Made by a program: the position numbers and the translations under genes. A model generated the notes under the pieces. It was not told the origin of the DNA and did not search any database. It was given only the letters and a program-made list of their open reading frames with translations. From Chrysemys picta bellii (Eukaryota), in assembly GCF_011386835.1 (NCBI RefSeq), contig NC_088815.1, positions 14,632,001 to 14,696,000 on the forward strand: a stretch of DNA of 64,000 nt, read 5' to 3'. Numbering within the stretch: position 1 is the stretch's first letter; each line of letters starts with the position of its first letter. This document shows, piece by piece, positions 4,609 through 8,406 of this stretch.

Positions 4609-5593
4609 AACCCATTGGAGGACTTCCTACTGCATTGAGTCACTGCAACTCTTCATGCATATTAGTTAGACCCGTGTTTAAATGTCTGCCGGACGGAGGC
4701 CTTGCCTTTCACCACCAGTGCTGCCACTTGGCATCCATTTGCACAATTAGCCACAAACTGACTGTCTTTAGCTAGTTTTGCGTTCAAGTTCCTCTGCACT
4801 AGCACTGCCCTGCAATGTTTGGGGTGCAGGAGCTGCAGGGATGTTCACATCTAAACAAAAACAATCCCGGATTTTTGTTTTTTTGTTTCATACAAACATT
4901 GCTACATTGACATTTTGGTTTGATAAACATTTTGTTTTTAAAAAATGTATCTGTTCAACCTAATCTTTAACTAGCTGAGCGTCCCATTAATACGAGGCAA
5001 ATACAAACAACACAAATACAATCAAATATCCGACCTGATCTTGTTTGAAAGATTTACAACAAAGTTCACAGCAACTGGGGAGCTATAAAAACATGGGGAA
5101 ATTACACTTTTTTCCTACCATCACTTACCAGGCTAGTTGTGTTAAAACTACCCTGCTATTTGTTAACTAGTGCGGGAGAGGAGCGCCGACATATCATTAA
5201 AACAAAGGGAATGGAGTAAAAATGCTCTGGGAACAATTTTACTGTAAGAGAGAGATACAAGGACAATGTTCTGCTGGATGCCCTGATTAGCACCCCATTG
5301 CAGAAACATCGGGAGTGCCCCATGTGACTGGCAGGAGAAAAGGAGGAAGAGTGAACATCTACTGGTGTCTTAGCTGCAAAAGCTGCTCTCCCTGGCTGAA
5401 AAACTCGAAGCCCCCCCCAGTGCCGTGTGTCTCAATGACCGGTCCCGGAGATCTCCCTGACACAGTTTAGGAAGGCAGCAAGCTGGTGCCTGGTATCGAA
5501 AAGGTTGAGGGACACTGGCCCTAGCACACAAGTGTCTTTCCCAGCGCAAGCGGCACCTCTGAGCATGTGATCTTGCAGCCCTGCGATACTCAC

Positions 5594-5674
5594 TGTCGAG
5601 GGTTGCTGGGAGGGCAGAGACCTCGTTGCCTCTCTGTCTGTTTGTCAGGGTGGTCGAGTGCTTCAGGGACGTAC
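5594..5674 (-). CDS. RFXANK: RFXANK coding exon, copy A (81 bp): (G)[26 protein letters not shown]
   Basis: Long T tract, then aaacgaggcag| acceptor and |gtgagt donor. Phase 1-1. Retains the conserved [25 protein letters not shown]. Confidence 0.93.
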
Positions 5675-7333
5675 CTGCCTCGTTTAAAAAAAAAAAAAAG
5701 AGTTGAAGTGGTGACATGTTGCAGAGCAGAACCGGGGTAGTTCCACCTGGGGGAGGTTCTACCAACACAGAAGTCTATCCCGCAGGATTCTGGGACGGTC
5801 ACCATGAAGCCTAGAACGGCCGAGTCAGCGTGAAGCGAGGGGAGCAGCTACAAGCGTCGCTGACGACTCTGTGTTCGGAATATCGCCAGGGTCAATCGTC
5901 CGTGGGGCTCGCAGTTTGTTACCACCCAGGAAGGTCTCAGCCATTCTGACTTTACAGATGACACCAGGGGACAGCCCGGACGTTCAGCCACAGTAAAGCG
6001 TGTATCTATGCCAAAGCAGGAGTCCTAGACCATTGTGGAAGTTCCCTGACTCTCAACGTTCCTTTGCTGTTCGCAAACAGCTGTGAAACCGGGGCATTTT
6101 TTCCACAGGACCCCTGCCTTATTCACTGCACAGGCTGGATGTACTCGGGTTGTGCAGAGGAGGCTGCTGTCTGTAAGGCCCCTGTCTCATTTGTTGTAGA
6201 AGCTGGCAGGTGTGCAGCAACGGAGGCAGGGGACTGCAGGAAGAGCACGCAGGGTCTCATGGTTAAGGTGGTCGAATGCAGCCCTGGAGAACTGGATTCT
6301 ACCCCTGCTTCTGCCACAGAGTTCCTGTGTGATGCTGGGCAAGTCACTTACATCAGACTTTACGCGGGTGGCCACTAATTGCGCATGCCTCGTTTTCTAG
6401 GGGCCCACTCTGACCCCCTGGGGTCTGACATACAGAAGAGCTGAAGTCAATGGGAGCTGTTCTTTGAACGTCTGAAATGTTCTTTAAGGCTAAGGCCTCT
6501 GACAAATCAGCCCTCGCCCTTTCCGATTGGGCACCCACAATTATTGGACACTTCTGATCCTAGTCTCTCTGTGCTTCAGTTCCCCACCTGTACTATGGTA
6601 ACAATAATCCCCTCAGTGCACAGGAGTGTTATGTCTGTAAAACACTCCGAGGCCATAGTGGAGCGTATTGCAGAAAAGCTCACGAGGAAATTATAATTCT
6701 GTAGTCGGAGCAGGGTTTGAATAGTGCGCAGTAAATAAGGCCTGGGGCCAGACACCGAACAGTGAGAAGAAAACAGAATATCGAATAGCTGCTCATTCGT
6801 ATAGCACCACCCATCCTGAGCACTGCATGAGGCAGGTTTCGGTGTTAAAAATAGCATGTGCTCACGTCATTAAATACTGTGTCCTAATGCACACGCACAC
6901 GGCGGGCCAAGTTAGGTTGCACAGGCAATCTTAATTCTGGCATTTCCTAACTTCTGAAAGCTTGACTTTCTAACCTGAATGTTTATTTACCATATTTTAA
7001 TGCAATTTCCTAAGGTCTTTAAAAAAGGAAAACGTGGAAAAATTTAAAAAAAAAAAAACACCCCAAAAATCCATGATCTTTGGATTCACAGCACAGTCCT
7101 CTACTATGTGAACTAATGGAGTAACTGGCAGCAGTAGAAGCTATTATCTTCTATGTGGCCCTGCCCCTAGAGGGGGACAAGACTCACACTTTGTTAGTGG
7201 GATTCACAGATATTTGCTGAACACCAAAGAAATGCCAAGACTCCGAAGTCTTGGATCACAGCCTTTCCCATGAGCATTTCACAGCAGAAGTTGTGCCTCT
7301 GAGAATGTGATCTTGCAGCCCTGCGATACTCAC

Positions 7334-7417
7334 TGTCGAGGGTTGCTGGAAGGGCAGAGACCTCGTTGCCTCTCTGTCTGTCTGTCACGGTGGTCGAGTG
7401 ATTCAGGGAAGCACCTG
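7334..7417 (-). CDS. RFXANK: Duplicated RFXANK exon, copy B (84 bp, or 81 bp from the distal AG): [28 protein letters not shown]. Alternative exon, tandem exon or pseudoexon.
   Basis: 75/81 nt identical to copy A, 1740 bp away. T tract, aaag|cag| NAGNAG acceptor and |gtgagt donor are intact. No stop or frameshift. Whether it is spliced cannot be determined from DNA. Confidence 0.55.
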
Positions 7418-8406
7418 CTTTGTTTTTAAAAAAAAAAAAAAAAAAAAAGTTAAACACTGGTTGAGAAGGTGAGTTGTTTCTCGCTGAAGACAGAATCTGG
7501 GCTAGTGATGTTTCCCAAAAAGGGACTGATGCTATATACCATAATGCAACGAACAAGGTTACACAGCACCCATCTTCCAAGCGCTATACGATTACTAGCT
7601 AACCCTTAGGGAATAAATAAATCTTCCTCCCTGTTTTACCGAGAGGAACCAGACTGGAGTTTAAGGCCCAAATCTTCAAAAGTAGCTGTCGACTTTTGGA
7701 TGCCCAACTTGAGATACCAGGGCCAGTGTCACTCCATTAGAAGTCGATGAAGGCTGCAGCGTGCAGTAGCGGTAAATGCCAGGCCTGTGGGGTCTCAAAC
7801 AGGACACCCACAAACTGTGACATTCACAAATCTGTGACCACTTTTGCTATCTTTGACCTGAGTGACTTGATCAAGGCTGCATAGAGCTAGGGTTAGAATT
7901 CAGGAGCTTCGAGTTCCCAGTCCTATGTTCAGTCCTCTAATAACACAACCCACATGGCCTGACCCCCACGCTCCTGCTCCAGCCACAGTAAACTTTGCTG
8001 CTGCTTCTCACTCGTACCATTGTGGAACAGCTGTCCCAGAGGCTGAGGGTCCTTTGGGTGCTATTCGTGCACTGCTTGTACGAAAGCACCACTTACTATC
8101 CATTTGTTCCTCAGTTATTTGAATGATAGAAGTGGGTTTAGTTCACAGCGGCTGGCCAGAGTCCCCCTGGGGTGGACTTTATAAGCCCAGGAAGTATGTA
8201 AAGGGACGGGTTAATAAAGTGGCATGGAGATAATCAGCCATTCCAGACAACGCTTCCTGCACTCCCTCTTCTTCTCTCCTAAGATCACAGCGAGGGATTT
8301 TCCTCTGCTGCTGGGTTTATCTCCCACTCATGGTGCCCAGTGACTACCAGTTTCTGGATCCATTCCTCCCAGCCATTCCCCACCCCATCAACCCCAAGCA
8401 ACTCAC

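What the first reader, a model, noticed from the sequence alone, without database searches (positions are those of the whole stretch)
5545..7460. Tandemly duplicated, in-frame RFXANK exon with intact splice sites in both copies
Seen in sequence: the exon encoding the conserved pre-ankyrin segment occurs twice, 1740 bp apart (copy A 5594-5674, copy B 7334-7414/7417). Both copies have a T tract, an AG acceptor and a gtgagt donor, and both are phase 1-1. Any combination (A, B or B+A) therefore stays in frame; B+A would give ...[17 protein letters not shown]..., doubling the motif. Copy B differs at 6 of 81 nt (T>A, K>N, L>V, N>D plus two silent changes). Five of the six changes fall in the first 33 nt, while the 38-nt donor-side intron flank has only one mismatch, a mosaic pattern. 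Copy B has an aag|cag| NAGNAG acceptor and an 84-bp length, which matches my recollection of the human exon. In copy A the upstream AG has shifted to an out-of-frame gag|gcag. Established knowledge: RFXANK is the ankyrin subunit of the RFX5/RFXAP/RFXANK complex required for CIITA-dependent MHC class II transcription, and human RFXANK has one such exon as I recall it. Inference: this is either a lineage-specific alternative or tandem exon that diversifies an MHC-II regulator, or a decaying pseudoexon partly homogenised by gene conversion.
Basis: partly seen in the sequence, partly recalled or inferred. Interest (0 to 1): 0.72.

Follow-up and report, generated by a model that had tools for sequence, protein, structure and literature searches.

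The report
Old duplicated exon in turtle RFXANK
The painted-turtle gene for RFXANK, a subunit of the complex that switches on MHC class II genes, carries two copies of one small conserved exon; the duplication is real, about as old as the common ancestor of turtles, crocodilians and birds, and public gene models already splice both copies into the protein.

Summary
A 163-nt segment (an 81-nt phase 1-1 exon plus its splice-proximal intron) occurs twice, 1740 nt apart, on the minus strand at 89% identity. The gene is RFXANK.

The window's exons match the first 200 residues of the public Chrysemys picta bellii RFXANK isoform X1 at 100%. That model already joins copy B (long 84-nt form) and copy A in tandem.

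The pair is not turtle-specific. Every turtle examined has both copies. Crocodilians and birds have a shorter, diverged B exon in the same place and phase. Tuatara, squamates, mammals and amphibians have one copy.

In a tree all turtle B copies form one clade, so the duplication predates crown turtles. The shared archosaur B exon puts it at or before the turtle-archosaur ancestor.

Copy A is the strongly conserved ancestral exon (3 nonsynonymous against 21 synonymous changes). Copy B is relaxed (18 against 14). B still changes at half the rate of the flanking intron, has no indels among the eight turtle loci compared, and keeps its frame and splice sites in every species examined.

The pseudoexon and assembly-artefact readings are rejected. 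This is an ordinary tandem exon duplication, already annotated but apparently undescribed.

The parts
8407..8548 (-). First coding exon of RFXANK, from the ATG at 8548-8546 to a phase-1 end at 8407 (donor gt at 8406-8405). The 5' UTR part upstream was not delimited.
   Evidence: residues 1-47 of the public Chrysemys picta bellii isoform X1 (P0154) match at 100%.
7418..7447 (-). Acceptor region of copy B: a run of more than 20 T, then aaaaacaaag|cag, a tandem (NAGNAG) acceptor.
   Evidence: The same aaacaaagcag context occurs at copy B of most turtles and of Alligator.
7334..7417 (-). Copy B of the duplicated exon. It is 84 nt from the aag acceptor or 81 nt (7414-7334) from the cag acceptor, phase 1-1. 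It encodes (A)[27 protein letters not shown].
   Evidence: P0154 residues 48-76 match at 100% and use the long form.
7277..7333 (-). Donor-side intron flank of copy B that is homologous to the flank of copy A (gtgagtat...).
5700..7276 (-). Intron between the two copies. It shows no similarity to the flanks of either copy and holds a MIR-like SINE at about 6330-6590.
   Evidence: no further homology; sequence read. The SINE identification is from memory of the MIR core and was not tested.
5675..5699 (-). Acceptor region of copy A: a T tract, then aaacgag gcag. The upstream AG (5680-5679) would be out of frame.
5594..5674 (-). Copy A, the conserved orthologue of the single exon of other vertebrates. 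It is 81 nt, phase 1-1, and encodes [26 protein letters not shown].
   Evidence: most of its residues are invariant across 32 vertebrate RFXANK proteins.
5537..5593 (-). Donor-side intron flank of copy A, homologous to that of copy B.
4005..4070 (-). Next exon (66 nt, phase 1-1), where the ankyrin-repeat domain starts (LSIHQLAAQGE...).
   Evidence: the confident fold begins at about residue 104.
2984..3084 (-). Ankyrin-repeat exon (101 nt, phase 1-0).
315..440 (-). Ankyrin-repeat exon (126 nt, phase 0-0). The rest of the gene runs off the left end of the window.
   Evidence: (PDB RFXANK 78 bits against ANKRA2 53 bits).

Best explanation
This is an ancient tandem duplication of one small coding exon of RFXANK. 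The exon encodes a highly conserved 26-residue motif just in front of the ankyrin repeats, in a part of the protein predicted to be disordered. The duplication happened at or before the common ancestor of turtles, crocodilians and birds. Copy A (5594-5674) kept the ancestral sequence under strong purifying selection. Copy B (7334-7414/7417) became an extra, faster-evolving exon. Both are 81 nt and phase 1-1, with good splice signals, so the spliceosome can include both. The main predicted product in this species therefore carries the motif twice (...ATLD-S-TSLKH...). Minor forms annotated in relatives arise from the tandem acceptor of B (plus or minus one alanine) and from skipping A or B. Shown here: the duplication, its age and distribution, the constraint on both copies, and that independent public annotations include both. 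Inferred: that both are spliced into most mRNA in this animal, and that doubling a short linear motif changes how RFXANK engages its partners. What the motif binds is unknown.
For: The repeat and its splice signals were read directly. The gene is RFXANK rather than ANKRA2. BORCS8 and a 140-residue F5/8-type-C gene flank it in related loci. The window exons match P0154, the Chrysemys picta bellii isoform X1, at 100% over residues 1-200, including B followed by A. RefSeq, Ensembl-derived UniProt and GenBank models of about 20 turtle species from both suborders contain B+A. Pairs of 268/267 residues differ only by the NAGNAG alanine. B-only models exist in Trachemys X3, Gopherus X4 and Caretta X3, and an A-only model in Gopherus X5. 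In DNA, both copies are 81 nt, phase 1-1, with AG and gtgagt in 8 turtle genomes, spaced 1159-2043 nt apart. Alligator and duck have a separate phase 1-1 B exon of 69 and 78 nt upstream of A. In Alligator it has the same aaacaaagcag acceptor as turtle B. Phrynosoma has one copy and no remnant. Tuatara, mammals and amphibians have one copy in their proteins. All B copies form one clade with 92/91 support. Copy A shows 3 nonsynonymous and 21 synonymous changes; copy B shows 18 and 14 (Fisher P = 0.0009). Exon B has 0.43 changes per column and no gapped column. Its flanking intron has 0.93 changes per column and 28-42% gapped columns. The indels in B seen in other species are all multiples of three: Alligator 12 nt, duck 3 nt, Pelusios 2 residues. 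In the AlphaFold2 model of P0154, residues 1-102 have pLDDT below 50, while the ankyrin domain is confident. DNA runs from three organism labels and several studies hold 54-90% of the stretch's words.
Against: Inclusion of B in mRNA therefore rests on public gene models whose evidence I cannot inspect, and some of these may be propagated by homology. The nonsynonymous share in B alone is only marginally below the neutral expectation (P = 0.02-0.10 depending on the transition bias assumed and the reference B sequence). No function is known for the motif. The papers I could search describe only the ankyrin repeats. Which isoform dominates is unknown.
Confidence: 0.85

Rival explanations
1. Copy B is mainly a regulated alternative (cassette) exon, or the two copies are used largely as alternatives, so the doubled-motif protein is a minor form.
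For: B-only and A-only models exist in Trachemys, Gopherus and Caretta, and one old Chelonia model skips both. Tandem exon duplicates are classically spliced in a mutually exclusive way (established knowledge). B evolves faster than A.
Against: Nothing enforces exclusivity: both exons are 81 nt and phase 1-1, and the intron between them is over 1.1 kb. The isoform numbered X1 has both in this species and in most of the turtles listed, and Ensembl-derived entries have both too. Both copies have the same strong donor and long T tracts.
Confidence: 0.12
2. Copy B is a decaying pseudoexon that is no longer used and looks intact only because turtles evolve slowly or because gene conversion refreshes it.
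For: There are three radical replacements in the motif in this species (K>N, L>V, N>D). The nonsynonymous/synonymous ratio of about 0.5 is only marginally below neutral. There are hints of local conversion in emydids and Chelydra.
Against: Frame, phase, AG and GT are kept in every turtle, crocodilian and bird examined. The 8 turtle loci compared show no indel in the exon, against 28-42% gapped columns in the adjacent intron. The exon's substitution rate is half that of the intron. The B copies are orthologous rather than refreshed from A. B is included in models from several annotation pipelines.
Confidence: 0.03
3. The duplicate is an assembly artefact of this genome.
For: None specific here. 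One relative (the Chelydra model with three copies) does look like a contig-edge artefact.
Against: The copies differ at 18 of 163 positions (89% identity) and have unrelated flanks. The same two-copy layout is present in nine other independent assemblies. DNA runs from several studies and three organism labels hold most of the stretch's words.
Confidence: 0.005
4. The duplication is recent and arose independently in turtles, and the archosaur segment upstream of A is unrelated.
For: Turtle A and B are still 79-96% identical in the exon, whereas the archosaur B is only weakly similar (E about 1e-6).
Against: The archosaur B is a separate exon in the same position and phase. It keeps the RQRG/S.E.SAL..D core. 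It shares B-specific states with turtle B: D for N in birds, and S for N in Alligator and in the trionychian and pleurodiran turtles. In Alligator it also shares the acceptor context. The B clade includes pleurodires.
Confidence: 0.04

Closest known systems
Tandem exon duplication in animal genes (Kondrashov and Koonin 2001; Letunic, Copley and Bork 2002; cited from memory, not read here)
   Same: Two neighbouring exons of one gene with the same length and phase and clear sequence similarity, made by a local duplication.
   Different: The textbook outcome is mutually exclusive splicing. Here the public models include both exons in series, which gives an internal repeat of a short motif.
NAGNAG tandem acceptors (Hiller et al. 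2004; cited from memory)
   Same: The aag|cag acceptor at copy B gives products that differ by one residue. Pairs of 268/267-residue isoforms are annotated in at least seven turtle species.
   Different: It is only a side feature here. In this species copy A has lost the tandem acceptor (gag..gcag), while Pelodiscus and Carettochelys keep it at A.
Polypterid fish RFXANK (Erpetoichthys P0072, Polypterus P0179)
   Same: The same motif-bearing segment occurs twice in the protein.
   Different: Both fish copies share lineage-specific residues (EITAR), a four-residue spacer separates them, and no other fish protein with two copies was found. It therefore looks like an independent duplication. No DNA could be fetched.
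Emerin exon pair in the same genome (scan note s1-318450)
   Same: Another old pair of 81-nt phase 1-1 exons, shared by reptiles and birds and already in public models.
   Different: It is a different gene and motif. I did not test that note.
ANKRA2, the paralogue of RFXANK
   Same: The same ankyrin-repeat architecture. Its ankyrin domain binds PxLPxI/L peptides, as RFXANK's does.
   Different: The window's ankyrin exon scores 78 bits to RFXANK chains and 53 bits to ANKRA2 chains, so this gene is RFXANK.

Membership tests
RFXANK orthologue | The ankyrin-repeat sequence is closer to RFXANK than to its paralogue ANKRA2. | tested here: met
   78 bits (3v30/3uxg, RFXANK) against 53 bits (ANKRA2 chains); 100% identity to the public turtle RFXANK isoform X1 over residues 1-200.
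RFXANK orthologue | Conserved neighbourhood (BORCS8 upstream, a small F5/8-type-C gene downstream). | tested here: inconclusive
   Seen in the duck and Pelodiscus loci. I did not annotate the window's own neighbours.
Tandem exon duplication | Adjacent exons of one gene with significant sequence similarity, equal length and equal phase. | tested here: met
   81 nt each, phase 1-1, 75/81 identical, E about 1e-49 for the 163-nt block.
Tandem exon duplication | Both copies are flanked by usable splice signals. | tested here: met
   T tract, AG and gtgagtat at both copies in all 8 turtles. No quantitative splice-site score was computed.
Tandem exon duplication | Both copies are found in mature mRNA. 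| not testable with these tools
The only evidence is indirect: RefSeq, Ensembl-derived and GenBank models contain both.
Mutually exclusive exon pair | The two exons are never included together (frame incompatibility, steric hindrance or competing RNA pairing). | tested here: not met
   Joint inclusion keeps the frame, the intron between the copies is 1659 nt, and public models join B to A.
Pseudoexon (unused decaying copy) | Evolves like the surrounding intron and accumulates frameshifts, stops or splice-site loss. | tested here: not met
   0.43 against 0.93 changes per column, and 0% against 28-42% gapped columns; frame and splice sites are kept in 10 species.
NAGNAG tandem acceptor | Two AG acceptors 3 nt apart, both used. 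| tested here: inconclusive
   The motif is present at B. The long form is used in P0154. Both forms are annotated in relatives. No reads were available for this species.

The most novel reading that the evidence does not exclude
The duplicated exon encodes a short linear binding or modification motif in the disordered arm of RFXANK. Turtles, crocodilians and birds would then have used a two-motif RFXANK for some 250 million years. Splice choices (B+A, A only, B only, plus or minus one residue) would tune assembly of the RFX complex, or its competition with class IIa HDACs, and hence MHC class II transcription. An apparently independent duplication of the same exon in polypterid fishes would point to a recurrent advantage of doubling this motif.
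Probability: 0.15. Interest if true: 0.55.

Novelty: new member of a known kind. Interest (0 to 1): 0.3.

Why it matters
RFXANK is needed for MHC class II expression, and the conserved segment in front of its ankyrin repeats has no function in the papers I could search. This natural experiment could help define what the segment does: the segment is doubled, the second copy has been kept for about 250 million years in turtles, crocodilians and birds, and it was apparently doubled again independently in polypterid fishes. The residues kept in both copies (the RQRG.E.SAL...D core) are the ones to test. For genome annotation nothing changes, because the exon pair is already in the public models.

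Tried and rejected
No junction counts could be made.
   - Local scripts did read the whole window file as a BLAST subject.
2. A 1740-nt tandem unit. Sensitive BLAST of the flanks found no homology beyond about 165 nt here, and 100-180 nt in the other species. Either the duplicated unit was short or the rest has decayed and been replaced.
3. Concerted evolution. This is rejected as the main force. Only two diagnostic intron positions (+15, +18) in emydids and one shared synonymous codon in Chelydra hint at local conversion.
4. The three-copy Chelydra model. The extra copy lies in a block at the contig edge that is repeated 3.9 kb further on, at 98.5% identity in one part and 83% in the other. 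It is probably an assembly artefact.
5. Codon-level test of B against neutrality. The result is only marginal.
6. Literature. No paper links RFXANK with exon duplication, and none of the papers holding both RFXANK and turtle concerns the turtle gene. A review describes only the ankyrin repeats.
7. Reedfish locus. No DNA was available.
Exons were handled one by one by reference and compared with the public protein P0154.
9. Human entries in the hit lists (P0015, P0019) were not fetched or used. No N run was filled.
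Full report
**What is in the sequence**

On the minus strand the window carries the 5' two-thirds of an RFXANK gene.
- The first coding exon runs from the ATG at 8548 to a phase-1 end at 8407.
- Two similar 81-nt exons follow at 7414-7334 (copy B) and 5674-5594 (copy A).
- The first ankyrin-repeat exon is at 4070-4005.
- Further ankyrin exons are at 3084-2984 and 440-315. The gene then leaves the window.

The repeat finder and two alignments give one block of 163-165 nt at 89% identity, spaced 1740 nt apart. There is no other similarity between the two neighbourhoods.
- six differences in 81 nt, five of them in the first 33 nt;
- one mismatch in the first 38 intron bases after the donor;
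- an aag|cag tandem acceptor at B;
- an out-of-frame upstream AG at A;
- phase 1-1 for both copies.

**Identity of the gene**

The 42-residue ankyrin exon scores 78 bits against solved RFXANK chains and 53 bits against ANKRA2 chains. In related loci the gene sits between BORCS8 and a 140-residue F5/8-type-C gene.

A word search with the open frame around copy B returned turtle RFXANK proteins that scored two to three times a single-copy match. Reading them showed why: they contain the motif two or three times. A second search and a cluster look-up listed RFXANK models for about 20 turtle species.

One of them, P0154, is named Chrysemys picta bellii isoform X1. It matches the window's exons at 100% over residues 1-200 and reads ...AQT-AG-[B motif]-S-[A motif]-TLSIHQ.... 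So the public annotation of what is evidently this species already splices B (long form) and A in tandem.

I did not build or search a joined model of my own. Exons were used one at a time by reference.

**Distribution**

Both suborders of turtles have B+A in their proteins: cryptodires, and the pleurodires Emydura and Pelusios. Annotated variants are:
- pairs that differ by the one residue expected from the tandem acceptor (268/267 residues in Trachemys, Malaclemys, Gopherus, Lepidochelys, Natator, Eretmochelys and Emydura);
- B-only forms (Trachemys X3, Gopherus X4, Caretta X3);
- an A-only form (Gopherus X5);
- one old Chelonia model with neither copy.

Alligator, Crocodylus, kiwi, ostrich, duck and budgerigar proteins carry a shorter, diverged segment in front of the conserved motif. 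It keeps the core RQR(G/S).E.SAL-D. Tuatara, three squamates, several mammals and three amphibians have one copy.

**DNA of relatives**

I fetched the loci of Trachemys, Gopherus, a cheloniid, Carettochelys, Emydura, Pelodiscus, Chelydra, Alligator, duck and Phrynosoma.
- In all eight turtles both copies are 81 nt and phase 1-1, preceded by a T tract and AG and followed by gtgagt. They lie 1159-2043 nt apart.
- In Alligator, B is a separate 69-nt phase 1-1 exon (L007:1782-1850) behind the same aaacaaagcag acceptor as turtle B.
- In duck, B is a 78-nt phase 1-1 exon (L008:2312-2389).
- The horned lizard has one copy and no recognisable remnant in the complete sequence upstream of it.

**Age of the duplication**

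In a maximum-likelihood tree of exon plus flanks, all turtle B copies form one clade with 92/91 support. Mean A-B identity within species (71.4 of 81) hardly exceeds that between species (70.4). The copies have therefore evolved separately since before the pleurodire-cryptodire split.

B-specific states are shared with archosaurs: D for N in TDRQR in birds, and S for N in RGSE in Alligator and in the trionychian and pleurodiran turtles. Together with the shared position, phase and acceptor context, this places the event at or before the turtle-archosaur ancestor.

The absolute age of about 250 million years comes from established phylogeny, not from my data.

**Constraint on the two copies**

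Substitutions were counted by parsimony on the accepted turtle tree.
- Copy A has 3 nonsynonymous and 21 synonymous changes, a ratio near 0.05.
- Copy B has 18 and 14, a ratio near 0.5.
- The two copies differ at P = 0.0009.
- B alone is only marginally below the neutral share of nonsynonymous changes (P = 0.02-0.10).

At the nucleotide level the signal for B is clear. Exon B has 0.43 changes per column and no gapped column. The flanking intron has 0.93 changes per column and 28-42% gapped columns. The indels seen in B outside that set (Alligator, duck, Pelusios) are all multiples of three.

This is not how an unused pseudoexon behaves.

**The mosaic pattern**

The 3' half of the motif is the better conserved half in both copies across species. 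That explains most of the mosaic.

In addition, the first 28 or so intron bases after B in Chrysemys and Trachemys carry the A-type GGGCTGC, where five of six other B copies have GGTCTTC. Chelydra A and B share a derived synonymous GCC codon. These hints fit short, local gene conversion, but they rest on very few sites.

**Structure and mechanism**

An AlphaFold2 model of P0154, built with a 32-sequence alignment, gives pLDDT below 50 for residues 1-102. That stretch contains both motif copies. The ankyrin domain from residue 104 onward is confident.

The duplicated unit therefore behaves like a conserved short linear motif in a disordered arm. The likely effect of the duplication is a second, looser copy of that motif. 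What the motif binds is not stated in the papers I could reach, which discuss only the ankyrin groove and its PxLPxI/L ligands.

**What could not be done**

The decisive RNA test failed for technical reasons. Inclusion of B in mRNA in this animal therefore rests on public models.
- Their NAGNAG and exon-skipping variants are, to my knowledge of the RefSeq pipeline, normally built from transcript alignments. I could not check this.
- Local scripts used the window file as a BLAST subject.

**Is it an assembly artefact?**

No. The copies differ at 18 of 163 positions and have unrelated flanks. The same layout is present in nine other assemblies. DNA runs from several studies hold most of the stretch's words.

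**Verdict**

This is a real, old and constrained tandem exon duplication that public gene models already splice in series. It is wider than turtles and is not a pseudoexon. It is a new, apparently undescribed example of a well-known kind of event, and of modest interest.

Noticed in passing
window 1302-1636: A 123-nt minisatellite (2.7 copies, 95% matches) in the RFXANK intron between the exons at 2984-3084 and 315-440.
   Followed up: no
window 3226-3281, 9339-9394 and about 6330-6590: MIR-like SINE cores (repeat family D2, plus one between the two exon copies). The reads filter tripped inside the first (3257-3293). The identification is from memory of the MIR core, not from a tool.
   Followed up: no
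L009 (Chelydra serpentina contig) 1-1501 and 3789-5439: The deposited Chelydra model P0001 has three copies of the motif. The extra B copy sits in a block at the contig edge that is repeated 3.9 kb further on (98.5% identity in one part, 83% with many gaps in the other). The related Macrochelys has two copies. This is probably an assembly artefact.
   Followed up: partly
P0072 (Erpetoichthys), P0179 (Polypterus): Polypterid fishes also have the motif twice in RFXANK. Both copies share lineage-specific residues and no other fish with two copies was found, so this looks like an independent duplication of the same exon. No DNA was available.
   Followed up: partly
P0147 (Platysternon megacephalum, TFK06530.1): A full-length RFXANK protein of 268 residues is deposited under the name 'sodium/hydrogen exchanger 7'. 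This appears to be a naming error in the source record.
   Followed up: no
L006 (Pelodiscus) about 4540-4550; L004 (Carettochelys) about 3710-3720: In the soft-shelled lineage copy A also keeps an aag|cag tandem acceptor. Pelodiscus isoforms X1 and X2 differ exactly as expected from it (...FD-TG-TSLKH against ...FD-S-TSLKH).
   Followed up: partly
window 6255-6278; L001 4250-4294; L002 4281-4304: A short HSTTLT-like translated match lies between the two copies in three turtles, inside the SINE-like element. It is most likely chance, not a third copy.
   Followed up: no
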